A stretch of DNA of 64,000 nt from Scyliorhinus canicula (Eukaryota): the NCBI RefSeq assembly GCF_902713615.1, contig NC_052147.1, positions 248,530,886-248,594,885 on the forward strand. The letters are read 5' to 3'. Positions 3,471 through 48,715 of the stretch are shown one piece after another. A model generated the notes under the pieces. That model had not been told where the DNA came from. It saw only the letters and a program-made list of their open reading frames with translations, and ran no database searches. Position 1 is the first letter of the stretch. Every line of letters begins with the position of its first letter. The translations under genes were made by a program, and so were the position numbers.

Positions 3471-3649
3471 CCTCTGCTGGGATCAACAGCAATCGCACAG
3501 GGCTTGTCCATCATCCCAGAGACAAGCCTTTTGTACTTCTGTCCATTAATCTTAGCCACATAAATGACATTTCTGAAAGAATCAGTCCAATAGATATTTT
3601 CAGCAATCCAGTCAACTGCGATGCCCTGTGGTGCTTGGAAACCAGGAAT
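3471..3649 (-). CDS. LRP1B: LRP1/1B-family exon, YWTD propeller ([60 protein letters not shown])
   Basis: 179 nt, phase 0-2; acceptor ctattttag|ATTCC, donor AGAGG|gtatgg; GIAVDW...IYWTD motif. Confidence 0.95.
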
Positions 3650-4049
3650 CTAAAATAGAAATGAAAATTACATTAGATTTGCTTTTAGAAATTGCAGTTT
3701 TCCATTTTTTCCCACAAGAATATTGTTTGGGGAAATTTAAGTGTCAAATGTTTAAATGAGTTACAATGACATTGTTTTCCAGGGATCTTAGATAAGATGT
3801 TAGTTTATCTCAAATCTTGCTGATTCTAAGTGATCTGGTCCAAAGCCCAAGTGTTTATGTCATATCAATTGCAAATAACTTGCACTTAAACCTCAGGAGG
3901 TCCCAAAGTACTTTATACTCAATTACACATAGTAAGTTCCCACAAACAGCAGTAAGATCATCTACTTATATAATGATGTTTGTTAAAAAATAAATGTTAG
4001 CATGGAGACCAGGATGAATACTATACTTTTCTTTGAATAATAATTATAA

Positions 4050-4345
4050 TATTATTATTGTCACAATAGGCTTACATTAACACTGCAATGAAGTTACTGT
4101 GAAAAGTCCCTAGTCGCCACACTCCAACGCCTGTTCGGGTATACTGAGAGAGAATTCAGAATGGCCAATTCCCCTAACAAGCACGTCTTTCGGGACTTGT
4201 AGGAGGAAACCGGAGAGCATGAAGGAAACCTATGCAGACAAGGGAGAATGTGCAGACTCTGTATAGACAGTGACCCAAGTGGGAATCGAACCCGGGACCC
4301 TGGCACTCTGAGCAACAGTGCTAATCACTGTGCTTCCGTGTCGTG
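4050..4345 (-). mobile_element. HE1/V-SINE-like tRNA-derived SINE with GTGACAATAA-type tail
   Basis: Minus-strand head with A/B boxes (GGTTCGATTCCC), the shared CACATTCTCCC..TGCATAGGTTTCC core and an (AAT)n tail; homologous copies recur in the window. Confidence 0.8.
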
Positions 4346-5002
4346 TCATGGTATCTGTGGTACTTGGATTAAACCTCTGTCAATACTGCACTGAAGTGTC
4401 TGCTTTTGGGCTTAAGTCTGGCATTTACTGTGAACTCTGACCCTTTGGAGCAAAGTTCAATGCCCGTTGTTATCAATCCTAATCTATTTGGAGACTCAGA
4501 ATTGTTCAGTTAAATCAATGAATCCACATGAGCAGGTCAAGCAGAGCTACTCTATTTATACTAATGGTTCTCAGCAAGGTTTGTTATATTTTATACCAGT
4601 CAATGGCTGCTATACCTTTCGATTATGTTATGTTTTTTGCATGACAGCTGCTGCACATAATGGTTACAAAGAGGACTGTATTGAGTAAATCAAACATTTA
4701 TTGCTTTACAATCTCTGCAAAATTGATACCTGTACAAATTAGTCTCCAGAGGAATGGGATTAATATGAAATAAGGATCTGTCCATAGTGCTAAATACATC
4801 ACATCTATGTTACCAATTGGATATCTAGATATTTGGCTTCAATTGACTGACCGATCCAAATTTCAAATTGATCACAGTCACTCTGGTTTTTCTATTTTGT
4901 TGTAAGGTATGAAGAAGGTTGCATCACTGGAGGATTAATTTATAGTATTTAGCCCTGGATACTGCATATGCCAGGTATTTGGCAGAATTTGAAAGTAAAT
5001 TG

Positions 5003-5092
5003 ATTCACCTGAGAAAGGAGCAGTGCTCCGAAAGCTAGTGTTTGAAACAAACCTGTTGGACTTTAACCTGGTGTTGTAAGACTTCTTACTGT
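5003..5092 (+). mobile_element. Penelope-like terminal fragment with degenerate hammerhead core
   Basis: CCTGAGAAA-GGAGC-AGT-GCTCC-GAAAG followed by the same sequence as the arms at 5461-5636 and 19438-19648. Confidence 0.65.
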
Positions 5093-5349
5093 TCACAAGT
5101 TAAAGATCAGGAAACAAGTCAAGTTCAGCTCATTTTGATCATACTAACCACTCATCACATCAAATCAAAATCACATATTTTGAAAACATTTATTGTAATA
5201 AATAAAGCATGAAAAATGCTATATTCATTACTTGCATAAAGGATTTAGACAAAATTTATAGGCAACAGCAGCAGCGCTAACTGTTTTGCTCAACATCGGG
5301 TAAATATAGGATATCCCCTTCATTTAGATATGACTTGTCTCACACACTT

Positions 5350-6195
5350 TGATTTTGATTTGGTTTGATTTATTGTCACATGTACCGAAGTACAGTGAAA
5401 AGTATTTTTCTGCGGCCAAGGAACGTACACAGTACTTACACAGTAGACACAAGAATTATCCAACAGGTTAATTTCAAATCACAAGCTTTTGGAGCGCAGC
5501 TCCTTCCTCAGGTGAAGGAGGAAGGAGCTGCGCTCTGAAAGCTAGTGATTCAAAACAAACCTGTTGGACTTTAACGTGGTGTTGTGAGACATCTTACTGT
5601 GCTCATCTCAGTCCACCACCGGCATCTCCACATCATAACAAGAATAATCAACAGAGAACATTGACAAATGGTACATCGACAAAACAGTGATTAGTTACAG
5701 TGCGGGACAAGGGGCCAAACAAAGCAAATACATGAGCAAGAGCAGCATAGGGCATCGTGAATAGTGTTCTTACAGGGAACAGATCAGTCCGAGGGAGAGT
5801 CGTTGAGGAGTCTTGTAGTTGTGGGGAAGAAGCTGTTCCTATGTCTGGATGTGTGAGTCTTCAGGCTTCTGTACCTTCTGCCTGATGGAAGGGCCTGGAA
5901 GAAGGCAATGCCTGGGTGGGAGGGGTCTCTTATAATGCTGTCTGCCTTCCTGAGGCAGCAAGAGGTGTATACAGAATTAATGTGGGGGTGGCAAGTTTGT
6001 GTGATACGTTGGGCTGAGTTCCTTGCGATCTTGGACCGAGCAGTTGCCGTACCAGGCTATGATGCAGCCGGATAGGATGCTCTCTATGGCACATCTGTAG
6101 ATGTTTGTGAAAGTCGATGCAGACATGCCAAATTTCTTTAGCTTCCGCAGGAAGTAGGGACGTTGTAGGGCTTTCTTTACTGTTGCAGCTTGAAC
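5350..6195 (-). mobile_element. Rex-Babar-like LINE 3' fragment, interrupted by a Penelope-like insertion
   Basis: C-terminal RT-element peptide KKALQRPYFLRKLKKFGMS...IESILSGCIIAWYGNC; 3' end GTACATGTGACAATAAA plus (ATCAA)-like tail; homologous to 63140-63845. Confidence 0.75.
5461..5637. mobile_element. Penelope-like inverted-repeat insertion
   Basis: Two inverted arms; flanked by a 12-bp TSD-like duplication acaagaattatc (5449-5460) / acaagaataatc (5638-5649). Confidence 0.7.
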
Positions 6196-7167
6196 AATTT
6201 TGTTTTCTTTTACTTCTCTGAAAGCCATTGGGCAAGCCATAAAAAGATGTTTTTTTCATTGGCTTTCAGGGTTAAGTCTTTTATTAAAGTGAGAAGTTTA
6301 AGATCCCAGGAAAGCTGTGAGGTACTTCTCCCCAGGCAGGAGAAGAATAGCTGACAATGGCAAAGGGTAGATGCTGCAACAATAGCAGAGACCTCTTAGA
6401 TCAGGAGAACATACCTCGTGGGAAAGAACGGGGAGTGGGGCTGGTTTGGGGGGGGGGGGGGGGGGGGGGTCACACCCTAGCTGCTCTTAAATGAGGAAAA
6501 AAAAGTTGTGTGAGTCTTTGAAATTTAGTTTCATCTGAAGCACCATGCAAAATGAGTGAACCCAGGATACATTCCCCTTCCATCTCATCCAGTAGGAAAA
6601 AATGATACAAGTTTTTTTTTTGCCATTACATGCTCAATAACCTGCTGCTGCATTTTAAGAATAATTTGGTGGTGGAATACAATGATTGTGTAACCAAAAG
6701 CATTGTCAAAGGAAAGCTCCTAGGTTTTAACCGCAGACTAAGAATGTTCGCAAACACCCTTTGAAGAAACTTCTGCAGTTTTCTGCTGAGCAGAGATTTG
6801 TTCTGGCTGATCAAAACTACCTGATGTATAATGTGCATTGAACCCTGGTTCTGTAGGTGATACCCTGTAATGGCATATAGCACCCATACTAACAGGAGAA
6901 TTGTCATAAAATTCATCCAGTGCTCTCTCATGAGTTAACTTCAAGGATTACATCACAACAGCACTCAGCTTTAAAACATGATCATTAGTACTGTAGCGAG
7001 CATAAAAAGCCAAAAACTGCAACAAAGAGAAATTCTAAACTGAATGTGAAGTAAAACTGGTTGACAAAAAAAAGTACAGCAATCAATTCTAAATTGTATT
7101 ATTAATGTACTTGCTATTAAAAGTTCATTCTTATTGATTTAATGGATTAGTGCTTTCCTGAAATTAC

Positions 7168-7409
7168 ATTCAGATCTGTGGCATCACTTGTCTGTCTCTT
7201 CCGTTTGTCTGAGATGTCTAAACAGGAGATTTTGCCTGTGTGCTCGTTGGTCCAGAAGATCTTCTTGCCTTTGATATACACATCCATCATACTAATTTTG
7301 ACAGTATCGTCTCCTTGAAACACTTGTTCATAGGCTGAGTTGGGGTCAAATGGATATATACTACGAATTTCATTCCTGGTCGCAATGTAGAGCACTTGAT
7401 GTTCTGAAC
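7168..7409 (-). CDS. LRP1B: LRP1/1B-family exon, start of YWTD beta-propeller with basic cleavage site ([17 protein letters not shown]...[31 protein letters not shown])
   Basis: 242 nt, phase 1-0; acceptor catacag|GTTCA, donor GAAT|gtaatt; FWTN repeat and KRKR|Q. Confidence 0.94.
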
Positions 7410-7838
7410 CTGTATGAAGATTACAAGGAGAAAAGATTACATTAACTGGCAGCTGCACATTTAATGTTTACTCATTTCATGGATGACTAATATAGAGCGG
7501 TTTTCAGGCAAGTGAGGTCCATTTAATCTATTATCAAACTTCCCATAAGACTACCTTAACATCTAAAATTATTATGAATCCAATAAATCTCAATGTTATT
7601 TGCTGAAGGAAACATTCCTGTTGAAGTCTGTCATAGTAAGTTGCTCCATCACTCTTTCTGTGTGCTGCACACATTTCGTATGCTTATTGCTGTACCAGTG
7701 AAAAATAATTGGATGGTCACTTTATTTTCTTTTTTTTTCCTTATTGACAGATATACTTCTAGAATATAGTTTTCTTCATTAAATTATACACTTAGTTATA
7801 CATCCCAAAATTCTGTTAATTTTCTAACTGCTTAGGAA

Positions 7839-7945
7839 GACAGCATGGTAGCACACGTGACTAGCACTGTGACTTCACAGCGCCAGGGTCCCAGTTTTGA
7901 TTCCTCGCTGGGTCAATGTCTGTGCGGAGTTTGCACATTCGCCCC
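7839..7945 (+). mobile_element. HE1-like SINE, 5' fragment
   Basis: tRNA-like head homologous to 22141-22348. Confidence 0.7.
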
Positions 7946-8479
7946 TTGATCCTCCCAATCATGAATAAAAATGACAAAGTGATTAGTAGCCCCAAGCCCC
8001 GTGTATCATGCACCACAGTTTACTGCGTTTACTGGCCAAATCCTAGTCAATTAAATACATTGTAATTAATTCTATTGGCCTGTACATTATAAAATAGCTT
8101 ATTATATCAGACAGTGTGAAGTCCACACATATAACACTCACAATCTCACCCTGATCTGCTAGATCTGTCTTAACATGCTCAAAGAAATTTAACATATTGA
8201 TTGGCCATTCCTAAACTGACTCCAGCTATTTAGACAAACTCTGCTGCTCACCCTTATACTATCCATCATCACAGTTTTTCTTTTAACAATTTCCTTCCAA
8301 TTGCTTGAAATCTCTCATATCTGTAATTTGACGTTTAAAATAGATGTCACATTTACTAATTTGCAATCATCAAGATGTGACCCCCAACCCCAATGAACAC
8401 TGCAGAAGTCTGGTTTGACAAATCCCTTGCTGCTGAGGCAATTCCTCATAATTACGAAACAGAATATTGAGGAAACCTT

Positions 8480-9080
8480 GGGCAAAATTCTCCCATCGGG
8501 AGACTAAGTCCCGATGCCGGAGTGAAAACGGGAGTGTTTCACTCCGGCATCGGATGCCGCTCCTCGCCCCCTATTCTCCCACCCCCTTGGCGCCGTGTAA
8601 AAGCGGCGCCGCGTAGATTACACGGCGGCCAGCGCCGCGTAAATGGCGCAGTTGCCGTCCTCCCCGCAAGAAATGTCGGATGGATCTTGCAGGGTGGCGG
8701 AGGAAAGGAGTTCCTCCTTCAGAGAGGCCGGCCCGCCGATTGGTGGGCACCGATCGTGGGCCAGACCCCTTTTGAGGCCCGCCCCCGGTGCTGGATCCCC
8801 CCCCCCCCCCCCCCCCCCCCCGCCGGCAGCGACCATGTGTGCACGGCGCCGGCGGGAACCCGTCGAATTGGGCAGGCCGCTCGGCCCATCCAGGCCAGAG
8901 AATCGCCGCTCGCCCATTACAAACGGCTAGAGGCGATTCTCTGAGCGGCCAGCCATAAATCTCGCCGCGCCGGTTTGGGAGAATCGCGTGCGGGTGCCGG
9001 GGCGGCGTGGCGGAACTTGCCCGGCGCCCCAGCGATTCTCCCACCTGTCGTGGGTTGGGGGGGGGGGGAGAATTCCGCCC
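8480..9080. mobile_element. GC-rich MITE, Harbinger/PIF-type
   Basis: Terminal inverted repeats (TIRs) GGGCAAAATTCTCCC / GGGAGAATTCCGCCC; CpG-rich and non-coding; same terminal motif as 32571-33238. Confidence 0.75.
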
Positions 9081-10299
9081 CCTAAGTACCGTCTGCCTCC
9101 AGCTTCTACAACCTCCACAGCATAATCTCCATTGATCACAAACATTTTTGGCTTACGTTCACTGTTAAACTGTACCTTTTTTTTTAGAATGCATGGACTG
9201 TAGAAAAATAATGATTTAATATTTCAGCAATGTTTCTGTGTTCAGTCTTCATTACTAATATTGTTAACCCTCAGTCTGCCTTTGCCTGCATGTGGAGGAG
9301 ATGGGGTGGGGTCTTGGATGCCAGCTGGAGAGGTGGTAAGAGACTCACAGTAACACCTTTGGGAAGACCTGCAGAACCAGAAGCCAATCTGGCAATTGCA
9401 AGGCCACTGACGGGCCTACCCAGAATCAGGACCCAGGGGCTGGGAAGGCCGACACACCAAGATTTGCAAGGCCTTTCGGAGGCCTGCAGCTCGTTTGTTC
9501 CATAGTGGCCACCGGGGAGGTGAGGACAGCTGCCACAACAGCCACCAGAGGTCCAGGATCACCAAGCAACTCAGATCAGAGGAGGGAATTTGTGGATTTG
9601 GTGTCACGAGGTAGAGGGCTGGAGGGGATCAGCAGCAAGAGCAGGGATGTGGCTCTCAGCAGACTCCTTCCTCCATCTCAACTGCCAAATCCCTTGATCA
9701 GGCACCAAGTGCCTTTGAATGAGGGCACCCTTCCATCTACTGCCACCCCCCTCCCTCACTCCACTCCCTGGGAGATAAAAAACAGCTTGCTCAGATTTTC
9801 TTGCTGTACTCCCCATGTGGCAATAGGGGCGATGGGGCGAGGCTTTTAAGTGATCATTACTTGTCCACTTAAGGGACTCAAATGGCGGCAAGTGGGAAGG
9901 CCAATTATGGGCCTTAGATGCCAGACTTAATTTTGGCAGAGGCAGGAAGGTAGCCAGATGCTCATATACCCCCCTCCTACCAGAGTAAATGTCCTCTTCA
10001 CCTTCAAATATGCCACTAGAGAGGACTGAAGATGCAGTCCTAAGTTAGTGGGGATGAAATTGGTACTCATTGCACACAATTTCTGGTTATAAAACAGGCA
10101 CAAATCAAATTAATTACTAGTCTGTATTTTCACAGACACTAGTTACACTGGCAAATTCATAGAATAGAAGCTTACAGTTTGTAAGCACAGCACTTATGTT
10201 CTATGAATTAGAAGCTTAACACATGTTAGAGGAACTCTTTGAGAAATGAGTCTGCAATGAGCAGAGCAGACATTATGCCTGCATTACTAATGATTCTTC

Positions 10300-10620
10300 A
10301 TATAACTCCTACAGTGCAGAAAGGCCTGTTGGCCCATCGAGTCTGCACCGATCCTCTGAAAGAGCATCTTACCGGAGCCCACTTACCCTATCCCGGTAAC
10401 CTGCACATCTTTGAACACTAAGGGGCAATTTATCATGGCCAATCCACCTAAACTGCACATCGTTGGACTGTGGGAGGAAACGGAAGCACCCAGAAGAAAC
10501 CCATGCTGACATAGGGAGAAAGTGCAAACTCCACACCGACAGTCACCCAAGGCTAGAAGTCAACCTGTGTCGCTAGCACTGCGAGGCATCAGTGCTAACT
10601 ATTTTGCCACCATACCGCTC
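10300..10620 (-). mobile_element. HE1-like SINE with CR1-type tail
   Basis: SINE head and core plus tail GATGGGCCAACAGGCCTTTCTGCACTGTAG. Confidence 0.75.
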
Positions 10621-11712
10621 CTTCAGCAGCCCCACAACTGGCAGCAAAAGATAAACTACATTTACTGTGAATAAAGAAAGATCCGGAATGTTCTCTCAAC
10701 CTCCACAGTCCTGAAAATTGGTTTCTGTTGCCCAAACTAACAATCCCCTGACAGAACTTACCTAAGTATTGCTGCTGCCAACACTCATTTATCTCATGTC
10801 TCCCCGCTTTGTGCCCCGGCTAATTTCTACGCCAAGTATCTCTATCAATAGTTTTTCCTTTCTCAGTTCATCTTTGTAGATCTGTTCCTTTCCTGAACAT
10901 TTAAAAATGATTTCTGATACCTCCTCTATTAATTCAATAACTTTAGTTATCTACTCAAGGTTTTATTCAAAGCCTATTTCAAGGATAAAGTGTTTATCAT
11001 GCTCACAAACCTCTTTAAAATGCTGTGCTTTTTCCACATAGGATCTGCTGAATATAAATAAATGTTTTTGTGTAATCTCTTGCCCACTTGACGTTAACTC
11101 ATTTAGAATTTTGTTCTTTTTATGTTCTGTCTTTATTGTGACTCTGGATCCCAGGTGTTTCTTACTATTCTGTGGCTTATCCCCCCCCCCCCCCTCTTTA
11201 ATAACAAATCCAATACTGCAGTCTCCTTCACAAATCATTTTCAAATGAGTTTCTCAGAACTTCAATAAATTGTGGTTCATAAACTGTCCCTGTTGTACTG
11301 TTGGAAAGAATGAAATCCTTGTGATCACAGATTCAAACTTATGCACTTATTTATTTTATGGCCTTCACAGCAGTATACCTATCTCCTCTGGTAGCCTGTA
11401 GCATATTCCACTCACTAACATTTCCCCTTTGTCATTTTTTAAATCCAGCCACACACATTCACAGGAGCATGTTCATAGTCGTTCTGTGTCGTTACTGACA
11501 AATAGCACCAATTCATCATTCCTTCTCAATGGTTGCAAAGCTCACACAATCCTGTAGCTTTCTTCTCTGAAGTGCCCTGGGACATTTTTCTATTTTAAAG
11601 CTGCTATTTAAATGCAACTTGTTTAGCTATGACTATATTTCAGTTATTCCGATAATATGGAATGGCTGCCTACAGGCCAGGATTGTTCCTTATATTTCTT
11701 GTATTAAACATA

Positions 11713-12185: not shown

Positions 12186-12209
12186 TTGACAGCGGGGTGG
12201 GTTGACTAA

Positions 12210-12689: not shown

Positions 12690-14220
12690 TGTTGACAGTG
12701 AATAAAAGTATGGTCACCTCCCAAAGGGCAAGAAAGAGGTAAGGCCAGTGTTAAACTGTATGCATGCACAGAGTATAGTGAACAAAATTGGGGAACTAGA
12801 AACATAAATTGCTTTTGAGGCATATGACATAGTAGCATTGACAGAAACATGGCTCAAGCCAGAACAAGCCTGGATAGGGTTGTGATAGTTAGCGATTTCA
12901 ATTACCCTAAGGCAGTCTGGGAAAAGGAAGGGGAGAAATTCTTGCAGTATGTACAGGAGGATTTTCTGGAACAGTACATTTGCAGAGCCATCAGGGTGCA
13001 AACTGTTCTGGATCTGGTCCGAGGAAATAAGGCAGGGCAAATGGACAGCGTCAGAGTGGGGGAGCAATTGGAACCTAGCGATCATAATATAAGATTCAAA
13101 GTTATGTTGGAAAAGGATAAAAATCAGTCACGGATTAAGATCCCAAACTGGAAAAGGGCAAATTTCAGTGTTCTAAAAGTTGAACTTGGGCAGGTTGATT
13201 GGAAACACATTATGATGGATAAAACAGTGGATGAAAAATGGGAGACTTTCAAAGGAGAGATGAATAGGTTGCAAGCTAGTTACGTACCCATGAGAAATAC
13301 ATATGGAGTATTCAAATCTAGAGTACCCTGGATGACTAAGGATATTGATGATAAAATATGGAAGAAAAAAGAGGCATATGGTACATGCCGGAATAATAAT
13401 AGCAATAGAAAGCAGGAAGAGCATCTCAAATGCAGGAGCGAGGCTAAGGCTGGAATAAGAAAGGCTAAGAGGAAGCATGAGGAAAGGATGGCAGGCTGTA
13501 AAAGATTAGTGAAGGGTAGAGCTGGGCCCATAAGGGACAAAGAGAATAAGCTGCTCATTGAAGTGGAGACTGTGGCACTGGCACAAAGTGAGTATTTTGC
13601 TTCTGTCTTTACCAAATTAGAAGATGGTAACAGTGTCCAGTTGAAAATGTGGGTGTTGAGCAACTGAACAGTATAGTGATAGATAAAGAAAAGGTGCTAA
13701 AAAGGCTGGTAGCACTCTAGATAGAGAAGTCGCCAGGTCCGGATGGAATGCATCCTAGATTGCTGAGAGAGGTAAGAGAGCATATTGCCGAGCCATTAAC
13801 AGAAATTTTCCAGGCCTCTCTGAACATAGGATTAGTCCCAGGGGACTGGAGGATTACAAATGCGACGCCTTTGGTAAAGAAAGAGGCAAAAGATAACCCA
13901 GGAAACAACAGACCTGTCAGCTTGACATCAATTGTGGGAAAACTGATGGAGGCATTAATACAGGATGAGATTAAATAAAAGCTTAGGGAAAATAAGGTAA
14001 TACTAGACAGTCAACATGGCTTTGTCAAAGAAAGGTCATGTCTGACGAATTTGATTGAGTAGCTCAGGATGAGGCATAAGCAGTCAACGAGCTAAGGACC
14101 TGCCTCCAGGCAGAGCACATATGAGTGAATAAAGAGCAGGGAGTAGGACGAATTAGATAGATTTGGCACAGGCAAAGTGGGCCAAATGGCCTGCCTTCAC
14201 TGCTGTATCATTCTTTGGAT
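12690..14220 (+). mobile_element. Degraded CR1 LINE with internal deletions
   Basis: ORF2 pieces DFNYP, LDLVRGN, SDHN, PWMT, EYFASVFT, HPRLLRE, DWRITNATPL, RPVSLTS; CR1-like 3' UTR near 14180-14220. Confidence 0.85.
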
Positions 14221-16584: not shown

Positions 16585-16620
<36 letters not shown>

Positions 16621-23227: not shown

Positions 23228-23350
23228 CTTCTGTTTTACAGCTGTGGTTATAAGTCTTTTTATAGTTTTTTCCACATGCACACATGTACGAACCCTTCGT
23301 GTTATTGCAGTAATGTGAACAAGTTCCAAATTGAAGGCACTCATTAATAT
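23228..23350 (-). CDS. LRP1B: LRP1/1B-family exon, calcium-binding EGF repeat ([41 protein letters not shown])
   Basis: 123 nt, phase 1-1; acceptor ttcacag|ATATT, donor GAAG|gtaatg; DINEC and CxNTxGSY motifs. Confidence 0.95.
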
Positions 23351-37352: not shown

Positions 37353-39882
37353 AGGGGCTGGTTTAGCTCATAGAACATAGAACATAGAACATAGAACGAT
37401 ACAGCGCAGTACAGGCCCTTCGGCCCTCAATGTTGCACCGACATGGAAAAAAAAAACTAAAGGCCATCTAACCTACACTATGCCCTTATCATCCATATGC
37501 TTATCCAATAAACTTTTAAATGCCCTCAATGTTGGCGAGTTCACGACTGTTGCAGGTAGTGCATTCCACGGCCTCACCACTCTTTGCGTAAAAAACCCAC
37601 CTCTGACCTCTGTCCTATATCTATTGCCCCTCAATTTAAGGCTATGTCCCCTCGTGATAGCCAACTCCATCCGCGGGAGAAGGCTCTCGCTGTCCACCCT
37701 ATCTAACCCTCTGATCATTTTGTATGTCTCTATTAGGTCACCTCTTAACCTTCTTCTCTCTAACGAAAACAACCTCAAGTCCATCAGCCTTTCCTCATAC
37801 GATTTTCCCTCCATACCAGGCAACATCCTGGTAAATCTCCTCTGCACCCGTTCCAAAGCTTCCACGTCCTTCCTATAATGAGGCGACCAGAACTGTACAC
37901 AATACTCCAAATGTGGCCGTACTAGAGTTTTGTACAACTGCAACATGACCTCATGGCTCCGGAACTCAATCCCTCTACCAATAAAGGCCAGCACACCATA
38001 GGCCTTCTTCACAACCCTATCAACCTGGGAGGCAACTTTCAGGGATCTATGTACCTGGACACCGAGATCCCTCTGCTCATCCACACTACCAAGAATTTTA
38101 CCATTAGCCAAATATTCCGCATTCCTGTTATTCTTTCCAAAGTGAATCACCTCACACTTCTCCACATTAAACTCCATTTGCCACCTCTCAGCCCAGCTCT
38201 GCAGCTTATCTATGTCCCTCTGTAACCTGCAACATCCTTCCGCACTGTCTACAACTCCACCGACTTTAGTGTCGTCTGCAAATTTACTTACCCATCCTTC
38301 TGCTCCCTCCTCTAGGTCATTTATAAAAATGACAAACAGCAACGGCCCCAGAACAGATCCTTGTGGTACGCCACTCGTAACTGAACTCCATTCTGAACAT
38401 TTCCCATCAACCACCACTCTCTGTCTTCTTTCAACTAGCCAATTTCTGATCCACATCTCTAAATCACCCTCAATCCCCAGCCTCTGTATTTTCTGCAATA
38501 GCCGACCGTGGGGAACCTTATCAAGCGCTTTACTGAAATCCATATACACCACATCAACTGCTCTACCCTCATCCACCTGTTCCGTCACCTTCTCAAAGAA
38601 CTCGATAAGATTTGTGAGGCATGACCTACCCTTCACAAAACCATGCTGACTATCCCTAATCATATTATTCCTATCTAGATGATTATAAATCGTATCTTTT
38701 ATAATCCTCTCCAAGACTTTACCCACCACAGACGTGAGGCTCACTGGCCTATAGTTACCGGGGTTATCTCTACTCCCCTTCTTGAACAAAGGGACCACAT
38801 TTGCTATCCTCCAGTCCTCTGGCACTATTCCTGTAGCCAATGATGACCTAAAAATCAAAGCCAAAGGCTCAGCAATCTCTTCCCTGGCTTCCCAGAGAAT
38901 CCTAGGATAAATCCCATCAGGCCCCGGGGACTTATCTATTTTCACCTTGTCCAGAATTGCCAATACTTCTTCCCTACGCACCTCAATGCCATCTATTCTA
39001 ATAGCCTGGGTCTCAGCATTCTCCTCCACAATATTATCTTTTTCCTGAGTGAATACTGACAAAAAGTATTCATTTAGTATCTCGCTTATCTCCTCAGCCT
39101 CCACACACAACTTCCCACCACTGTCCTTGACTGGCCCTACTCTTACCCTAGTCATTCTTTTATTCCTGACATACCTATAGAAAGCTTTTGGGTTTTCCTT
39201 GATCCTACCTGCCAAAGGCTTCTCATGTCCCCTCCTTGCTCGTCTTAGCTCTCTCTTTAGATCCTTCCTCGCTTCCCTGTAACTATCAAGCGCCCCAACT
39301 GAAACTTCACGCCTCATCTTCACATAGGCCTCCTTTTTCCTCTTAACAAGAGATTCCACTTCTTTGGTAAACCATGGTTCCCTCGCTCTACCCTTTCCTC
39401 CCTGTCTGACTGGTACGTACTGATCAAGAACACGCAATAGCTTTTCCTTGAACAAGCTCCACATATCCAGTGTGCCCAACCCTTGCAGCCTACTTCTCCA
39501 ACTTATACATCCTAAGTCATGTCTAATGGCATCATAATTGCCCTTCCCCCAGCTATAACTCTTGCCCTGCGGGGTATACTTATCCCTTTCCATCACTAAT
39601 GTAAAGGTCACCGAATTGTGGTCACTGTCTCCAAAGTGTTCACCTACCTCCAGATCTAACACCTGGCCTGGTTCATTACCCAAAACCAAATCCGATTTAG
39701 CCCAGCTCACTGGGCTAAATCGCTGGATTTTAAAGCAGACCAAGCAGGCCAGCAGCACGGTTCGATTCCCGTACCAGCCTCCCCGGACAGGCGCCGGAAT
39801 GTGGCGACTAGGGGCTTTTTACAGTAACTTCATTGAAGCCCACTCGTGACAATAAGCGATTTTCATTTCATTTCATTTTTTC
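37353..39882 (+). mobile_element. ATTTC-tailed tRNA-derived SINE split by the CR1 (37353-37370 plus 39704-39882)
   Basis: The two halves reconstitute the 60613-60800 sequence; TSD ATTACT (37347-37352 / 39883-39888). Confidence 0.9.
37371..39693 (-). mobile_element. Young 5'-truncated CR1 LINE with uninterrupted ORF2 remnant (~740 codons, complete RT domain)
   Basis: Stop-free frame from DLVLGNEPGQV to the stop at 37473; QHGF, GVPQGSVLGP, KFADDTK motifs; (GTTCTAT)n tail; TSD AGCTCA (37365-37370 / 39704-39709). Confidence 0.96.
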
Positions 39883-40894: not shown

Positions 40895-41094
40895 CTGGAT
40901 AAAAGCAAATTACTGCGGACGCTGGAACCTGAAACCAAAAAGTAAATGCTGGAAAATCTCAGTAGGTCTGGCAGCATCTGTGGGGAGAGAAAAGAGCTTT
41001 GACAAAGGGTCACCTGGACTCGAAATGTTAGCTCTTTTCTCTCCCTACAGATGCTGCCAGACCTGCTGAGATTTTCCAGCATTTTCTTTTTGCT
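40895..41094. mobile_element. Penelope-like hairpin insertion with a degenerate hammerhead core in the loop
   Basis: ~54-bp inverted arms with 2 mismatches; TSD-like tttagtattgttac (40879-40892) / tttagtattattac (41095-41108). Confidence 0.75.
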
Positions 41095-41229
41095 TTTAGT
41101 ATTATTACTAGGTTTCTAAAGTAAACACATCCAAGTCATACACTGTCCTTTTAAACAGGAAAGGAGTATTTCAGCTATTGACTTAATAGTCAACTCAAGT
41201 CTTAATAGTTTATTGAAACTTCCAATAAT

Positions 41230-41900
41230 CCCTAGCCAAGCTGTACCAGTACAGCTACAACACTGGCATCTACCCGGCAATATGGAAAATTGCCCAGGTG
41301 TGTCCTGTACACAAGAAACAGGACAAATCCAACCCAGCTAATTATGGCCCTATCAGTCTACTCTCCGTCATCAGCCAAGTGATGGAAGGAGTAATTAACA
41401 GTGCTGTCAAGCGGAACTTATTCAGCAATATCCTGCTCACAGATGATCATTTGTTTAGGTTCAGCCAGTGTCACTCAGCTCCAGACCTAATTTCAGCCTT
41501 GGTTCAAACCCTCCACCACCGATGAACAGTGGCAGCCGTGTGTACCGTCTACCAGATGCACTGTAGTAACTCACCAAGGTTCCGTCGGGAGCATCTTTCT
41601 AACCCACAACCACTACCATCTGTAAGGACAAGAGTAGCAGACACATGGGAATCCCATCACCTGGAGGTTCCCCTCCAAGTCACTCACCACCCTGACTTGG
41701 AAATATATTGCTGTTCCTTCACCGTCGCTGGGCAAAATCCTGGAACACCCTCCCTAACAGCACAGTGAGTGTACCTACACATCAAGGACTGCAGTTTCAA
41801 GAAGGTAATCCACCACCACCTTCTGAAGGGCAACCAGAGATGGGCAATAATTGCTGGCCTCGCCACGACACCCACATCCCATAAATGAATTTTTAAAATT
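41230..41900 (+). mobile_element. Old CR1-group LINE fragment (second family), internally deleted
   Basis: CPVHKKQDKSNPANYGPISLLS peptide; 3' end shared with 23455-23716, 45890-46555 and 60840-62100. Confidence 0.75.
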
Positions 41901-42661
41901 GTAACATTTCTAATCAAAATGTTCAACATTTCAGAAGAATACATCTTGAAAATTTGCAGACAGTTGAAGAATTTTTTATGCCTGTTTCCATTATTTCACC
42001 CAATTCTGATTCTTAAATTAAAATTAAAACAGAAGAAGCAAGACTTTGTAAATAAGCTGTCTTTTAATTTTGCTGCAAATGTTGTTCTGCTAAATGTCAG
42101 CTTGGTTCAGTGCTGGTACTCATACCTCTAAATCTGAAAGGCATGGGATTGAGCCCTATGCCAGGGCTTCTGAAAATCTAACTCCTCCATGCAATACTGA
42201 GGGAATGCCACACTGTCAGAGGTGATGTTGGTTTTCATAGAAAATGCTAAGCTATGGCTCGGTCTGTCTGTTTAGGTGATTGTTAAAATAAGCACTGTGA
42301 GAATTCCGCTGCTGTTTGAATGATGGCCCAGCCACATTTATCTCTTGATCAATTTCAAAAGCAGCTGATCTTATTATCATTTGAAGCAACGGAGTTTGAA
42401 TAACCTGTCATGCTCGTCCACATAAAGAAAACCAATAAATAACTTTGGATGTGACCAACACGATATAAGTCCAAGTTCTTTCATTTTCCTTAATGTTGTT
42501 GCAGCCTTATGCCAAACTATAAATGTTTATTCACCCTTAGAGTTTAACTGATACATAATTCATTTTGCCTATTGAAAATATATGACCTGTTATCTTTGAA
42601 ACCTAACACATTCGTATTTAGGATATTAATAAATCTATCTAAATAAAATGGATGCACATAC

Positions 42662-42784
42662 CACAGTCCACTTCATCAGAGTTGTCACCACAGTTATTCA
42701 CTTTATCACAAACTCGCTCAGGCCGCAGGCACACTCTCCCATTTTTGCATCTGAATGATCGTGGGGGCGGACATTGAAATTTGA
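42662..42784 (-). CDS. LRP1B: LRP1/1B-family exon, LDLa repeat ([41 protein letters not shown])
   Basis: 123 nt, phase 1-1; acceptor ttttaaaaag|TCAAA, donor TGTG|gtatgt; translated by hand, not in the ORF track. Confidence 0.93.
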
Positions 42785-42877
42785 CTTTTTAAAACAAAAT
42801 AGGAAAAAAGAACTTAACAAACTTGCAATAGATCAATCTGTAATATATTGAGCGTCTTCCACATATAAATACTTTGG

Positions 42878-44440
42878 CCGCTATTTAACGGAATGAAACC
42901 AGAGTCCAGTATCGAGCATTTTTAGCGGGGTGTATTAAACGGGACTCTTCTTTTTTAGGGCATCAGCGACCAAGGCCCTACCGAAGCCACACATGCCTTA
43001 ATTTCCTGCACTGAGGAACAGTTCAGGACACGATTTTAAATGGCGCCCTGGTCTCTTGAACTCCCAACGCAACCCCCGCACCTCACCAACATCCCAACTT
43101 ACCAATTAGGGGATCCTCCACCCCCTCACCCTACCTCATAAGGGGGGGCACCCCCGGGCCCGATCTCTGGCATGGGCAAGATGCCACCCTAGCAGCTTGG
43201 CGGTGCCCTGTCAGCCTGGCAGTGCCACCTGGTCATCCTGGCTGTGCAAGGGTGGCACCTGGGTGGCACTGCCAGAGTGCCAGACCGGCCATACCAAGGT
43301 GCCCAGGTGACATCAGCAGTGCCAGGGTACCACCCACCCAGGGGCCTCCGATCACCTGGAAGACCTCCCCCCCCGCCCCCCAAATACCATTCTGCCTGGT
43401 CCACGTTGTGGGGACCAGTGCTAAACAGTGCCGGCTCGGGGTCTCAGAGGTGAAGGGATTCGATCCCGGACGCTGAGTATATCCAGCGTAGTCATATTCA
43501 AGTGAGGCTAACTCACTTGAATATGCAAATCTGGGTCCATTGAGGTAGATGATTTCCTTTATAACTTATCTCTGAAACTTTTCGGTGGCATCTCCAAGAA
43601 ACATTGGCAACATTTTTCAGGCCCTTTTGCTGGGGGCAGAGAAGACCTCAAACTGAGATCTTGCTGGCACAAATCCCAGGATGCACCTCTGGTGAGATGT
43701 AGTGGAAACCAGTCGTGATGACCAAGCTGGGATTGCAGAGGTGAGCATAGCCCCCGAGTTGTGAGGGACATGGAAGGGCATTGTTCTGGAAGTGCCAGGG
43801 TGTTGGGTAAAGTGCCAGGTTGGCATTGCCATGGGTAGACCATATGGGAGCTCCTTTGGGGTTTCTCCTTATGTGTGTGTGGAGGATCATTGTTGGCGGG
43901 GAGGGGTGGGTGAGTTGTTCATGCATTGGAGTCGGAGAGGTGGAGTCTGTGGAGCGGGGTGAGGGTTGGAGGGTTCTGCCAGTGAGGGAGGGGAGTGCCC
44001 TGATGCTGGCGGATGGGGGTAACTGGTTACTCCGATGCTAGTGTGGCACTGGGATGGGGAGGTTTCCTCGATCATTGCAAGGGTTGCCTTTATGAGTGTG
44101 GGGAATATTCCGCTTGTCCGCCAGGGAGTTCTGGTATCCGTCGGTGAGGGGGGAATCCTGATCTCCTTGACGGGGGATTGGGGTTGGAGGGGGTTAGTGG
44201 GGGGCAGGGGTGCACAGAATGCTGCTTAATCAGGCAAAGCTGGTGAGTTTCAGGCAGCTTTTCTCACTTGATCCAACACTATGCAATTTTGGGAAAACTC
44301 CCCCCCCCCCCCCCCCCCCCCCCCGTGCGGTGGAATTTTTCTGTTGCTCGCGCTGTCAGGATTAAATGCTGCTCCTGAAGTTAATGGACGTTCAACTGGC
44401 TCACCGAAAGTAAAAGGGGTTATTAGGAACTCCTCCCTCC
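42878..44440. mobile_element. GC-rich Harbinger-like non-autonomous element cluster
   Basis: GGCACTGCCA repeat clusters and subterminal motifs shared with the other GC-rich elements. Confidence 0.45.
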
Positions 44441-44795
44441 CAATTGGATGTCCGCAATGCTGCTATATCCCTATCTCCAATGTGTAACATGACACCAACC
44501 ATGCTTTCAGGTTACAATGGAGGAAATCTTTCAAGAAACTTCTGCTACACACCCACCTGGGACCAACGGCTGCAATAATAAATGCAGCAATAACTGGTCC
44601 ACACCTTCTCTAAACATTATAGCTTACCCAATTATCTCCTGCAGACACAGAAACAAGAAAAGCCCATTAGGTTTTCCCAATTTTCTTCGATCAATCCCAC
44701 TTACCAGACTACCCAATACATTGTTCTATTTTTCTATTTTGGTAAATGTACAAGACATAGCATTTACTGAATTTAAAAGAATGTGATTGATGTAC

Positions 44796-44918
44796 CACAT
44801 GTTTCTGGGTTTTCGTCTGAATTGTCTCCACAGTCATCCTCTCCATCACACAGCCATGATAGAAGTTTACAAAGTGTATTGTTGCATTGGAATTCATCTA
44901 TGTTACAGGTTGTTTTCA
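44796..44918 (-). CDS. LRP1B: LRP1/1B-family exon, LDLa repeat ([41 protein letters not shown])
   Basis: 123 nt, phase 1-1; acceptor tttgcag|TGAAA, donor TGTG|gtaca; DDCGDNSDE motif. Confidence 0.95.
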
Positions 44919-45495
44919 CTGCAAAGAAGAAGCATTGAACAATCTGATTTTCCAATTCATGTAACCAATATAGTAAATATAGGATCATCAATTTTAATAC
45001 AGACAAGTCAATTGAAGGATGAGTAATTCAATAGACTCATTCATTTATAGATCAATTTAAGTCTCTTCCAGTTTCATATTGTAATTTATTTGACGGCCAA
45101 AATGTTTGCTCTTAGTGGAGAGCTCCGAGCTATTTTTATAGCAACAAGAAACAAATATGCCATGTTCACTATATTTCTATAACCCTCTGTAATTTTGTTT
45201 GAGTGGGAATGAAAAATTAAACCTGGTGCCACATTCTCCTTTTTTAGCATTTACTTACTTGTATACACAGACCTGTTCAAACTTGGGTTGGGAGAGAGGT
45301 GAGGGCTGAAGTGGGTTCAATATCCCGTCTGATGGCTGGAATATGAAGCCCAGGTGATTTTGACTCCTGGGACACATTTGTATATACGCTATCACTCCTT
45401 CACTCATAACCGAATGGAAGCATAAGATGGCCGACAGATTGAACCATAACGTTGGAAGACTTGAGCGCATGCTTGCCAGCATCATTTTATAACTG

Positions 45496-45805
45496 GCAGG
45501 GTGGTTAGCACTGCTGCCTCACAACATAAGGGACCCGGGTTCAATTCTGGCCTTGTTGAATATGTGTGTGGAGTTTCTACCCTTGTCTGCGTGGGTTTCC
45601 TCCGGGGGCTCCAATTTCCTCCCACAGTCCATAGATAGGCAGGTTAGGTAGCCTGGCTAAATTGCCCCATTCGTGTCTATGGATGCACATGTTAGATGGG
45701 TTTAAGGGGATAGGGTGGGTAGTGGGCCTATGTAGGGTGCTCTTCAGAGGGTCGGTGTAGACTCGATGAGCCGAACGGCCTCCTACACTGTAGGACTTCT
45801 ATGGT
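45496..45805 (+). mobile_element. HE1-like SINE with CR1-type tail
   Basis: Head, core and tail ...GAGCCGAACGGCCTCCTACACTGTAGGACTTCTATG. Confidence 0.8.
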
Positions 45806-45889
45806 TATAGGGAAAACCACAATGCTCCCTGCTCATTGACTAAAATAGTGGTTGAACCCCCAATTACATTACTGGAGCCTTAGATTAAA

Positions 45890-46555
45890 GTGCAACGGTG
45901 GGGCACACCACACAAATGCCAGGCAATGACCTTCTCCAACAAGAGAGAACCTAAGCATCACAGTCAATGTTCAATCACATTCCCATTGCTGACGCACCCC
46001 CCCCCCCCCCCAACTATCAACATCCTTGGGGTTACCATTCACCAGAAACTGAACTGGACTAGTCATATAAATACCGTGGCTACAAGGGCAGGTCAGAAGG
46101 CTGGAAATTCCATGGCAAGTAACTTACCTCCTGACTCCCCACAGCCTGTCTGCCATCTACAAGGCACAATCAAGAATATGATGGAATACACTACACTTAC
46201 CTGAATAAATGCAGCTCTAACAACAAGCTCAAGAAGCTTTATACCATTCAGGATAAAGTTGCCTGCTTCCATCCAGCAGATTAATCATTCGCTCAGCCCA
46301 CCAACAGTACACCATGTCTGAAATATATACTATCGACAAGATGCACTGCAGCAGCTCACCAAGGGTCCTTTGACACAATCTTCCAAAACCACAACTTCTA
46401 TCACCCAGAAGAAGAAAGGCAGTAGATACATGGGAGTACCTGCAAGTATCCCTTCAAGTCATACTCAATCCTGGCTTGGAAATATATCGCCATTCCTTCA
46501 GTCACTGGGTCAAAAAACCTGGAACCCAATCACGAACAACATTGCAGGTCCACCT
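45890..46555 (+). mobile_element. Old CR1-group LINE 3' fragment
   Basis: TINILGVTIHQKLNWTSHINTVATRAGQ peptide, homologous to 61317-61550. Confidence 0.75.
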
Positions 46556-48585
46556 GCTGTGATGACCATGTGCTTTGGGAAAAGCATGTATTTTGTTTTG
46601 TGCAATGCTCCCTTTAAGACCAGGGTGAACTGGGGTGTATTCTGACGTCATTAGGTTCTTCAAAAATGGCCATTTGACCTGGGATTTCCCTAGAGATAAA
46701 CAGCTGAGAAGCAAATAGTAAATAGCAAGCTAACTGAAGTGGAGCTCATTCAGCCTGCATTTTTTATTTAGCAGTTCAGAAAACATAGACATTTGTGTCA
46801 AGACGAAACAAATGTTCTCTCCAAATGGAACAGTTTTATGTTTGGCATAAAACAAATCCTGTCTTTGAAGCAGGTCTCAGATAATAGAACAGAGACTGTT
46901 CTACTGTGTGTGTTACACAGCTGGCAAGAGTAGGAAACTGAAAACAGGCAGGACAAGAGATGGTGGATCAAAAAAGGTAAATTGTTGCTGTTTCAGGGTT
47001 GCCAGAGGCTATGAGATCATTGAAGGGGTTGGAGAAGGGAGTCTCTGATGATTCTATGCCACCGCGACTGTCATCACCAAGATCAAGTTGAAGGCAAGCT
47101 TTGACAGTAAAAGGAACATGTGGCAACTGGGGAACCCCACCCACACAGGCACCCGCTCCTTCAATCACCACCTGCTTCACCTGTGACAGAGATTGTAGGT
47201 CGCACATTGGATGCCTCCATCACCTGAGAACTTATTTTTAGTGTGGAAGCAAGTTACATTCGATCCCTAAGGACTGCTTAAGAAGAAGAACGTGGACTGC
47301 AGCAGATTAAGAAGGTATCTTTTCACCACATTCTCAAGGCCAAGGAGGGATGACCAACAAATATTGGCCTTGCCAGTGACTTTTGCATTTCAAGTCAAAC
47401 AGAAAAATGTAGGCCCACATTTTCTAGCTCCCTGCGATCGGTTTTGCCCCATTGGACACAGCTCACCATTGGCCCTTGTCGGGATCTTCCAGTCTGCCGC
47501 CACAGCATTTTGCATGGCTCACCTGTCCTGTCACCAGGGAACCTATGGCAGGCACATATTCACTGTGAAGGGCCAGAAAATGCCTCCCACCAATAACTGA
47601 AGACATATGAGAATAAAACTCCATGATTTCCCCATTAGTAGTATATTATACTGACGCATTACTGATTTGATTTCTGAAAACAAAGTGTGTAAACTGTTTA
47701 AAACGTATGAAATCAAATCCATTCTTTTCAACATTGTGAATAGTTCTGTTCTTCTTTCTCGCTTTTCTTTTACTTGCACTCTGTCATTGTTACTTGAATC
47801 TCCAGCCAGGATAATAAAGATTATGGAACTACAGACTCGTCTTCAATTTTCTCAGCGAGACAGAAGTGGGAATCTGTAAAATTGTTTGGTTAAGAAATAG
47901 CACCAACTAACCAGTCATTGTTAGCTAATTTTATGATTATATTTCATTGTTCACCCCAAATCAAATGTAACAAAATGCCTGCCAAAATTCCTCTGTGGAT
48001 TCTTTTCAGCACAATGGTTAACAGATGTGTATCAAATTCTTGTGCATACTATTCGACAAAGTCATTAATCCTCCACATCGTTACCTTGTTGACATTGATT
48101 TGTAATGGTAGCAATGCATGCATTAATGCATTTGTATGGAAAATTTCTGTCAGTCATTTTAACACTCATTTCAGGCTGTTCAAAGAGATGAGGTAATGCC
48201 TTCAGTAAAATAAAAGACAGAGGTTTTATGTTATATTTGTTTGTTTGCAACTCATGTAGCTGTTAACATATTCCCTTAAGATGTTCGCAATAAGTTAAAT
48301 ATGACCACTTTAAACAATGCTAAGCTCACTGAAGGATTTAAACTCCCTCATGTAGGTAGCAGACAATGAGAAACAGCTGGCATTGAAGGCATTCAAAGCT
48401 TTGACGTAAAGCCATCAACCAAGGGCCCAACCATATGGAAATAGAATTTACTGAACATATGTCAAAGTGCATTCATAAAATACAGGTAATAAACAAGTTT
48501 CACTAATGTGGAGGCATATCCCAACCCAATGCAACCTGAAAATTAAATGGATAGGAGTGAAACAATGTTAAGCTACTTTAGTTAC

Positions 48586-48715
48586 CTTGTTCACAGCTTT
48601 CTTCATCACTGCCATCGAGACAATCAGTCTCTCCATCGCAATGCCATCTGACAGGAATACAGTGGCCATGCTTACACTGGAACTGATCTTCTTTACATTT
48701 AATTACACAGTCTTT
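48586..48715 (-). CDS. LRP1B: LRP1/1B-family exon, LDLa repeat ([43 protein letters not shown])
   Basis: 130 nt; acceptor aacag|AAAGAC, donor CAAG|gtaac; six-Cys LDLa pattern with DCxDGSDE. Confidence 0.93.

What the first reader, a model, noticed from the sequence alone, without database searches (positions are those of the whole stretch)
3471..48715. LRP1-family receptor with a mosaic of LRP1B-like and LRP1-like segments: ancestral-type LRP1B or a third paralogue
Seen: an intact spliced ~396-aa segment. From recalled human sequences, the LDLa and first EGF parts carry LRP1B-type residues (DCV.(E/K)CKEDQF, CVKF.CP, C.KDEF.CSN.KCIP..LQCD, NPCG.DAYCN....FC.C..GFQRN). The Ca-EGF and propeller are LRP1-type (DINECL.FGTCS..CNNTKG, NEIRS..P..P.SAYEQ.FQGD, WTN.HTG.IS, L.SGM.D.P.AI.VDP.RG) and lack the aromatic insertion I recall after YWTD in mammalian LRP1B. 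It also appears more diverged than an orthologue of the highly conserved LRP1 should be. Inference: it is either a chondrichthyan LRP1B that kept the ancestral propeller or an extra paralogue lost in mammals.
Basis: partly seen in the sequence, partly recalled or inferred. Interest (0 to 1): 0.7.

Follow-up and report, generated by a model that had tools for sequence, protein, structure and literature searches.

The report
Catshark LRP1B keeps ancestral propeller
This is an ordinary, expressed piece of the catshark's LRP1B receptor gene; its only notable point is that its last propeller domain still looks like LRP1, which suggests the odd propeller of LRP1B in bony vertebrates arose after sharks branched off.

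Summary
Eight minus-strand exons (48715-3471) have canonical splice sites and compatible phases. They splice into an open 396-codon segment: four LDLa repeats, an EGF, a Ca-binding EGF and the start of a YWTD propeller. This is the end of ligand cluster IV plus the last propeller of an LRP1-type receptor. Spliced contigs from public runs join exon 7 to exon 8 exactly as predicted.

The similarity pattern is also real. Exons 1-5 carry LRP1B-only residues. Exons 6-8 look like LRP1 and lack the 15-residue insertion after YWTD that bird, gar and teleost LRP1B all have.

It is not a mosaic of origins. ML trees place every partition as sister to bony-vertebrate LRP1B: whole region 99/99, exons 1-5 100/100, exons 6-8 97/89, exons 7-8 96/83. 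AU tests reject an LRP1 placement for the whole region and for exons 1-5. The propeller looks LRP1-like because bony-vertebrate LRP1B changed rapidly there (stem 0.78 against 0.23 changes per site) while the shark gene kept ancestral states. The shark exon 7 still shares a loop deletion with LRP1B.

Best reading: the catshark LRP1B orthologue. A third paralogue, or old gene conversion from LRP1, is not excluded, because I could not count loci in this genome. The scan holds no earlier LRP note for this genome.

The parts
48586..48715 (-). Exon E1: last Cys of the preceding LDLa repeat plus one full LDLa repeat ([12 protein letters not shown]...). The 5' boundary is uncertain by 4 nt (alternative AG at 48713-48712).
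   Evidence: Splice sites; Pfam Ldl_recept_a E=1.3e-15; upstream context in homologues.
44796..44918 (-). Exon E2: LDLa repeat with the LRP1B-type [13 protein letters not shown] motif. Phase 1-1.
   Evidence: (E=4.7e-12).
42662..42784 (-). Exon E3: LDLa repeat (VKFQCPP...). Phase 1-1.
   Evidence: E=2.5e-9.
36381..36515 (-). Exon E4: the last LDLa repeat of cluster IV, with LRP1B-type RACGK.EF.CSNG.CIP.ELQCD. Phase 1-1.
   Evidence: (E=1.7e-11).
29488..29622 (-). Exon E5: non-calcium EGF module (NPCGIDAYCN...). It is 56% identical to bird LRP1B and 31-42% to LRP1.
23228..23350 (-). Exon E6: calcium-binding EGF module (DINECLQFG...).
   Evidence: (EGF_CA E=1.9e-6).
7168..7409 (-). Exon E7: start of the last YWTD beta-propeller. 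It includes the surface loop with a multibasic KRKR|Q at the position of the LRP1 RNRR/RHRR|Q processing site. The loop is 19 residues, against 17 in LRP1B and 24-32 in LRP1 and lamprey.
   Evidence: Spliced contigs join 7168 to 3649.
3471..3649 (-). Exon E8: first full YWTD (LDL-receptor class B) repeat. It is continuous through the site where bony-vertebrate LRP1B has a 15-residue insertion. It ends in an open phase-2 donor, and the next exon lies beyond the window.
   Evidence: (Ldl_recept_b E=6.8e-12).

Best explanation
The window holds eight consecutive exons of the catshark orthologue of LRP1B, the giant endocytic receptor that is the sister paralogue of LRP1. They encode the last four ligand-binding LDLa repeats of cluster IV, the two EGF modules that follow, and the first blade and a half of the last YWTD beta-propeller, including the loop where LRP1 is cut by furin-type convertases. 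Shown: the exon model, transcription and splicing of exons 7 and 8, the domain content, and the placement of every partition as sister to bony-vertebrate LRP1B. Inferred: most LRP1B-specific change in the LDLa/EGF part happened before cartilaginous and bony fishes split. Bony-vertebrate LRP1B then remodelled its last propeller, with a rate burst and a 15-residue aromatic insertion. The shark gene kept the ancestral, LRP1-like state, and that produces the mosaic look. Also inferred from conserved cysteines, acidic calcium-binding clusters and the KRKR site: the protein binds ligands through these repeats, and it may be processed into two chains as LRP1 is.
For: Exon model and open frame. Domains. 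No other exons in the window. Spliced contigs. Whole-region ML tree puts the window sister to bird+gar+teleost LRP1B at 99/99, in the species-tree order (shark,(bird,(gar,teleosts))). E1-E5 give 100/100, and AU rejects a placement with LRP1 (delta lnL 35.6, p=2e-5). E6-E8 give 97/89 and E7-E8 give 96/83. Whole-region AU rejects window+LRP1 (p=0.0016) and window+Mobula LRP1 (p=0.0003). The bony-vertebrate LRP1B stem is 0.78 in E6-E8 and 0.23 in E1-E5, while the shared LRP1B stem is 0.14 and 0.51. Polarised sites in E6-E8: 24 where window=LRP1=lamprey and only LRP1B differs, 0 where the window shares a derived state with LRP1, and 2 where it shares one with LRP1B. The window and LRP1B lack the same ~12-residue N-terminal part of the E7 loop, which LRP1, lampreys and the two invertebrate rows that group together (Rhopilema LRP1-like and an unnamed JGI protein) have. 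Exclusive residue sharing: 8 sites with bird LRP1B against 3 with shark LRP1. A genuine chondrichthyan LRP1 exists (Mobula P0188, and the Chiloscyllium exon fragment P0001), and the window is only 60-71% identical to it.
Against: On E6-E8 alone the AU test does not reject grouping with shark LRP1 (p=0.20; p=0.14 for E7-E8) or with LRP1 generally (p=0.11). With bony-vertebrate LRP1B removed, E6-E8 pairs weakly with Mobula LRP1 (77/86). The join with LRP1B in E6-E8 is between two longish branches. Only four LRP1B sequences and one full-length chondrichthyan LRP1 could be fetched. No other chondrichthyan LRP1B-type protein was obtained. Locus count, synteny, the 12th LDLa repeat and the cytoplasmic tail were not testable.
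Confidence: 0.8

Rival explanations
1. It is a third LRP1-family paralogue, sister to LRP1B, kept in cartilaginous fishes and lost in bony vertebrates. Sharks would then also have a separate LRP1B with the derived propeller.
For: The tree position (sister to all sampled bony-vertebrate LRP1B) is equally what such a paralogue would show. The number of LRP1-type loci in this genome could not be counted. No shark LRP1B-type protein appeared in the listed hits.
Against: It needs an extra duplication and an extra loss. In the whole-region tree the two lamprey paralogues sit outside gnathostome LRP1+LRP1B (90/77). That fits a single gnathostome duplication giving LRP1 and LRP1B and leaves no obvious source for a third copy. 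The gene-tree order within the LRP1B clade matches the species tree. Nothing observed needs a third gene.
Confidence: 0.08
2. It is the LRP1B orthologue, but its cbEGF and propeller exons (E6-E8) were overwritten by gene conversion from LRP1 in the cartilaginous-fish lineage. That would remove an insertion that was already present.
For: AU does not reject window+Mobula LRP1 on E6-E8 (p=0.20) or E7-E8 (p=0.14). Without bony-vertebrate LRP1B the window pairs with Mobula LRP1 (77/86). E6 is 76% identical to Mobula LRP1 against 62-68% to other LRP1s. The 24 ancestral-looking sites would arise under conversion too.
Against: The ML trees prefer LRP1B for E6-E8 and E7-E8 (97/89 and 96/83). E7 shares a loop deletion and E7-E8 share several residues with LRP1B. 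In E7 and E8 the window is no closer to shark LRP1 (60-61% and 64%) than to bichir LRP1 (65-66% and 64%), whereas LRP1s including lamprey are 78-97% alike in E8. There is no exclusive window-Mobula sharing in E6, and only 3 such sites overall.
Confidence: 0.08
3. It is a fast-evolving LRP1 orthologue, a pseudogene or an assembly chimera.
For: Highest raw identity over the whole peptide is to LRP1 (bichir 61-63%, Mobula 60-63%).
Against: AU rejects LRP1 placement for the whole region and for E1-E5. A separate genuine chondrichthyan LRP1 exists. The frame is open with intact splice sites. The exons are collinear on one strand. Spliced contigs of about 1 kb span E7-E8 and continue on both sides.
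Confidence: 0.02

Closest known systems
LRP1B (low-density lipoprotein receptor-related protein 1B) of bony vertebrates, e.g. Lagopus muta P0302, Lepisosteus oculatus P0311, Astyanax mexicanus P0191
   Same: Same module order at the end of cluster IV (LDLa x4, EGF, cbEGF, YWTD propeller). Shared LRP1B-only residues in E1-E5. Shared short E7 loop. Sister position in all trees. E1-E5 are 64% identical to bird LRP1B.
   Different: It lacks the 15-residue aromatic insertion after the first YWTD of the last propeller. E6-E8 are only 36-47% identical to bony-vertebrate LRP1B, against 57-65% to LRP1. It keeps a multibasic KRKR at the processing-site position, where gar and teleost LRP1B have none.
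LRP1 (CD91) of jawed vertebrates, e.g. Mobula birostris P0188, Polypterus senegalus P0173
   Same: Identical module order. E6-E8 are LRP1-like at most sites, with no insertion. There is a basic site where LRP1 has RNRR/RHRR. Highest raw identity overall (60-63%).
   Different: It falls outside the LRP1 clade (AU p=0.0016). In E8, LRP1s including lamprey are 78-97% alike but the window is 58-64%. Its E7 loop is 19 residues, 5 to 13 shorter than the 24-32 of LRP1. It lacks LRP1-type CKPLAWKC and W.GRQC in the LDLa repeats.
Lamprey LRP1-like proteins (Lampetra fluviatilis P0163, Petromyzon marinus P0187)
   Same: Same architecture. They share ancestral states with the window, such as the one-residue-longer cbEGF loop.
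   Different: They branch outside gnathostome LRP1+LRP1B and are 53-58% identical to the window.

Membership tests
LRP1B | Groups with named LRP1B proteins, not LRP1, in a rooted phylogeny | tested here: met
   Sister to bird+gar+teleost LRP1B: whole region 99/99, E1-E5 100/100, E6-E8 97/89, E7-E8 96/83. AU rejects LRP1 placement for the whole region (p=0.0016) and for E1-E5 (p=2e-5), but not for E6-E8 alone (p=0.11).
LRP1B | LRP1-type module order at the end of ligand cluster IV: LDLa repeats, EGF, cbEGF, YWTD propeller | tested here: met
   Pfam per exon. Collinear alignment to residues ~3630-4040 of LRP1B proteins. This feature is shared with LRP1, so it does not discriminate between the two.
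LRP1B | Twelve LDLa repeats in cluster IV (review PMC8469001; that this is one more than LRP1's 11 is my own knowledge) | not testable with these tools
   Only the last four repeats lie in the window. No LDLa exon lies in 48.8-64 kb.
LRP1B | Extra insert of about 33 residues in the cytoplasmic tail (my knowledge of the original LRP1B descriptions, not checked here) | not testable with these tools
   The tail exons are outside the window.
LRP1B | Furin-type site between cluster IV and the membrane (REKR in human, PMC8469001) | tested here: inconclusive
   KRKR|Q lies at the homologous loop position. Bird LRP1B has EEKR|Q, while gar and teleost LRP1B have no basic site. Cleavage itself was not tested.
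LRP1B | 15-residue aromatic insertion after the first YWTD of the last propeller. It is present in every bony-vertebrate LRP1B sampled here, but it is not a published criterion. | tested here: not met
   Absent from exon 8 in the genome and in the spliced contigs. I read it as a later gain in bony vertebrates, so it does not argue against orthology.
LRP1 | Groups with LRP1 of jawed vertebrates and shows their high conservation of the last propeller | tested here: not met
   AU p=0.0016 (whole region) and p=0.0003 for pairing with shark LRP1. E8 is 58-64% identical to LRP1s, which are 78-97% alike among themselves.

The most novel reading that the evidence does not exclude
The gene is not the LRP1B orthologue but a third LRP1-type receptor, sister to LRP1B, that cartilaginous fishes kept and bony vertebrates lost. 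Sharks would then carry LRP1, a derived LRP1B and this ancestral-type copy.
Probability: 0.08. Interest if true: 0.6.

Novelty: new member of a known kind. Interest (0 to 1): 0.3.

Why it matters
In itself this is an ordinary orthologue of a well-known receptor gene. Its modest value is evolutionary. It shows an LRP1B whose last beta-propeller has not undergone the remodelling shared by bird, gar and teleost LRP1B (a rate burst plus a 15-residue aromatic insertion). This would date the remodelling to the bony-vertebrate stem, after the split from cartilaginous fishes. The shark protein is then a natural pre-remodelling comparator for anyone asking what the insertion does, or why LRP1B and LRP1 differ in trafficking and processing. 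It also illustrates how unequal rates between domains can make an orthologue look like a mosaic.

Tried and rejected
1. The exhaustive representative search with exon 7 returned almost only short LRP1 exon fragments and one full-length carp LRP1. LRP1B is probably merged with LRP1 at 50% clustering (my inference).

2. Profiles built from separate window exons plus LRP1 scaffolds (alignments A1 and A2) were abandoned because MAFFT stacked the LDLa exons on each other.

3. The search with carp LRP1 over the region listed only LRP1.

4. The sub-region trick with lamprey gave only 24 candidates, but these supplied teleost LRP1B, Mobula LRP1 and a second lamprey paralogue.

5. The same trick with Mobula was swamped by LRP2 because scores sum over repeats. 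It still gave bird and gar LRP1B. No shark LRP1B-type full-length protein was obtained, so the catshark's annotated protein and its name remain unseen.

6. P0023 (Goodea) was considered as a possible LRP1B fragment. I dropped it after reading it as a divergent teleost LRP1 with missing exons; that judgement rests on my recollection of the LRP1 C-terminus (sequence shown).

7. The PDB sequence search with exon 7 found nothing.

8. The raw-read RNA run X21 had no reads on the exons, so nothing can be said about strand or expression level.

9. Earlier scan notes hold nothing on LRP genes in this genome.

10. The papers searched contain nothing on LRP1B in cartilaginous fishes or on the propeller insertion.

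Full report
WHAT IS THERE

The window has no N runs. On the minus strand, stop-to-stop reading frames carry four LDLa-type six-cysteine modules, two EGF-type modules and two YWTD-propeller pieces. Reading the junctions gives eight exons, each flanked by AG and GT, with compatible phases:
- E1 48715-48586
- E2 44918-44796
- E3 42784-42662
- E4 36515-36381
- E5 29622-29488
- E6 23350-23228
- E7 7409-7168
- E8 3649-3471

The junctions E1/E2 through E6/E7 are phase 1, E7/E8 is phase 0, and E8 ends in an open phase 2. Joined, the exons give 1190 nt, or 396 codons plus 2 nt, with no stop.

Pfam assigns Ldl_recept_a to E1-E4, EGF_3 to E5, EGF_CA to E6 and Ldl_recept_b to E8. tblastn with full-length bird LRP1B, gar LRP1B and Mobula LRP1 finds these eight exons in collinear order and nothing else. 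So there are no hidden alternative propeller exons, and no coding sequence lies in 1-3470 or 48.8-64 kb.

In the homologues, the residues before KDC are the end of the preceding LDLa repeat. E1 therefore carries that repeat's last cysteine plus one complete repeat. Its acceptor is at 48715 or possibly 4 nt further in.

TRANSCRIPT EVIDENCE

Several public runs hold about a tenth of the words of the 4.1-kb stretch around E7 and E8, which is the share the two exons make up. Laid on that stretch, a 1049-nt contig (run X1) and a 1017-nt contig (run X2) align to 7168-7411 and then directly to 3470-3649, with no mismatch and no gap. Both continue for hundreds of bases on either side, and a third run covers both exons on separate contigs (table 8).

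The intron is absent from these contigs, so E7 and E8 are spliced as predicted, and E8 carries no insertion in the transcript. One raw-read RNA run had no reads on the exons.

WHERE IT SITS IN THE PROTEIN

The peptide aligns end to end with about residues 3590-4040 of full-length LRP1-type receptors: carp LRP1Ab 3592-3997, bichir 3605-4010, Mobula 3641-4041 and bird LRP1B 3629-4039. This is the end of ligand cluster IV, the two EGF modules and the start of the last beta-propeller.

THE SIMILARITY PATTERN IS REAL

Over the whole peptide, the window is 55-63% identical to every LRP1. That is less than gnathostome LRP1s are to each other (64-89%) and less than lamprey is to them (63-68%). It is 60-63% identical to the chondrichthyan LRP1 of Mobula and 71% to the bamboo-shark LRP1 exon fragment. 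So it is not the shark LRP1.

Against named LRP1B from a bird, a gar and two characiforms, E1-E5 share residues that no LRP1 has:
- DCV..CK
- [13 protein letters not shown], where LRP1 has CKPLAWKC
- R.E.VC, where LRP1 has W.GRQC
- RACGK.EF.CSNG.CIP.ELQCD
- NPCG.DAYCN in E5

E1-E5 are 64% identical to bird LRP1B and 55-60% to LRP1. E5 alone is 56% against 31-42%.

E6-E8 go the other way: 57-65% identical to LRP1 and 36-47% to LRP1B. All four bony-vertebrate LRP1Bs carry a 15-residue aromatic insertion after the first YWTD that the window lacks.

IT IS NOT A MOSAIC OF ORIGINS

I built ML trees (IQ-TREE, LG+C20 by PMSF) on 38 sequences: the window, 19 gnathostome LRP1s, two lamprey paralogues, four LRP1Bs, five LRP2s and seven invertebrate relatives.

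| Partition | Support for window + bony-vertebrate LRP1B |
|---|---|
| Whole region | 99/99 |
| E1-E5 | 100/100 |
| E6-E8 | 97/89 |
| E7-E8 | 96/83 |

In the whole-region tree the order is (shark,(bird,(gar,teleosts))), as in the species tree. For E1-E5, AU rejects a placement with LRP1 (delta lnL 35.6, p=2e-5). AU on the whole region rejects grouping with LRP1 (p=0.0016) and with shark LRP1 (p=0.0003).

The branch lengths explain the look. In E1-E5 the shared LRP1B stem is 0.51 and the bony-vertebrate stem is 0.23. In E6-E8 the shared stem is only 0.14 and the bony-vertebrate stem is 0.78. Most LRP1B-specific change in the ligand-binding part predates the shark/bony-fish split. Most change in the propeller came later and only on the bony-vertebrate line.

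Polarising with lamprey, E6-E8 have 24 sites where window = LRP1 = lamprey and only LRP1B differs. There are none where the window shares a derived state with LRP1, and two where it shares one with LRP1B.

An independent rare change points the same way. The E7 surface loop is 19 residues in the window and 17 in LRP1B. It is 24-32 in LRP1s and lampreys, and 29-31 in the two invertebrate rows that group together (Rhopilema LRP1-like and the unnamed JGI248). The window and LRP1B lack the same N-terminal ~12 residues of it.

CAVEATS AND RIVALS

On E6-E8 alone the AU test does not reject a grouping with shark LRP1 (p=0.20; p=0.14 for E7-E8) or with LRP1 in general (p=0.11). When bony-vertebrate LRP1B is left out, E6-E8 pairs weakly with Mobula LRP1 (77/86). 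This could be two slowly evolving shark genes sharing ancestral states, or an old gene conversion from LRP1.

Several results argue against conversion:
- The window shares states exclusively with Mobula LRP1 at only 3 sites, none in E6. It shares 2 with sturgeon LRP1 and 8 with bird LRP1B.
- In E7 and E8 it is no closer to shark LRP1 than to bichir LRP1.
- The loop deletion inside E7 is LRP1B-type.

A third paralogue sister to LRP1B would give the same tree. I could not count LRP1-type loci in the catshark genome, see the flanking genes, or obtain any other chondrichthyan LRP1B-type protein. The two lamprey paralogues branch outside gnathostome LRP1+LRP1B (90/77). That fits one gnathostome duplication and makes a third copy less likely, but this is inference.

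HOW IT MOST LIKELY WORKS

From the sequence, each of the four LDLa modules keeps six cysteines and the acidic D.SDE cluster that binds calcium in this fold. E6 has the DINEC start of calcium-binding EGF modules. E8 has a YWTD repeat.

By homology with LRP1 and LRP1B (review PMC8469001), these repeats belong to one of the two main ligand-binding clusters, and the propeller serves pH-dependent ligand release.

The loop in E7 carries KRKR followed by Q at the position where LRP1s have RNRR or RHRR followed by Q. Bird LRP1B has EEKR there. Gar and teleost LRP1B have no basic site. Processing into two chains is therefore plausible for the shark protein, but it was not tested.

COMPARISON WITH WHAT IS KNOWN, AND VERDICT

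The gene is best filed as the catshark LRP1B orthologue.
- Met here: phylogenetic placement and module order.
- Not testable in this window: the 12-repeat cluster IV and the cytoplasmic insert.
- Absent: the propeller insertion seen in bony-vertebrate LRP1B. I read this as a later gain, not a defining feature.

I found no paper on LRP1B in cartilaginous fishes or on this insertion, and no earlier scan note on LRP genes in this genome. Those notes did identify the genome as a catshark.

The finding is real and correctly observed. Its more exciting readings (true mosaic, extra paralogue) are not supported. What remains is an ordinary orthologue with a modest evolutionary point.

Noticed in passing
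P0163 (Lampetra fluviatilis) and P0187 (Petromyzon marinus), region ~3683-4088: Two lamprey LRP1-like paralogues, 64% identical over this region, group together (81/83) outside gnathostome LRP1+LRP1B (90/77). This suggests that the LRP1/LRP1B duplication postdates the cyclostome split and that lampreys duplicated the gene independently.
   Followed up: partly
window 23228-23350 (E6), alignment columns ~245-292 of /scratch/tree_in.aln: The cbEGF loop before the last cysteine is one residue longer in the window, Mobula LRP1 and both lampreys than in bony-vertebrate LRP1 and LRP1B. This implies parallel one-residue deletions in both bony-vertebrate paralogues, or an exchange between them.
   Followed up: partly
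Homologues of window 7168-7230 (E7 loop) in P0311, P0191, P0194: Gar and teleost LRP1B have no basic convertase-type site at the position where LRP1 (RNRR/RHRR), bird LRP1B (EEKR) and the catshark gene (KRKR) have one. Furin processing of LRP1B may therefore not be universal among vertebrates.
   Followed up: no
window 37473-39758 (-), 24802-27195 (-), 12849-13667 (+): LINE-type retrotransposon ORFs lie inside the introns. One is an uninterrupted 761-aa ORF with a reverse-transcriptase domain, on the gene's strand in intron 3. The others are shorter reverse-transcriptase and endonuclease pieces.
   Followed up: partly
window 3948-4358 and 4907-6276 (intron between E7 and E8): Two repeat blocks collect very high summed depth in contig sets (up to about 3.7e5) and hundreds of raw RNA reads on both strands, with many variant copies. 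They are probably abundant, transcribed SINE/TE families. ARAGORN finds no tRNA-like head there.
   Followed up: partly
P0189 (Varanus komodoensis LRP1), homologue of the E7 loop: This database protein has only 7 residues where other LRP1s have 24-32 and lacks the furin-site segment. It is most likely a gene-model artefact. I left it out of the E7-E8 tree.
   Followed up: no
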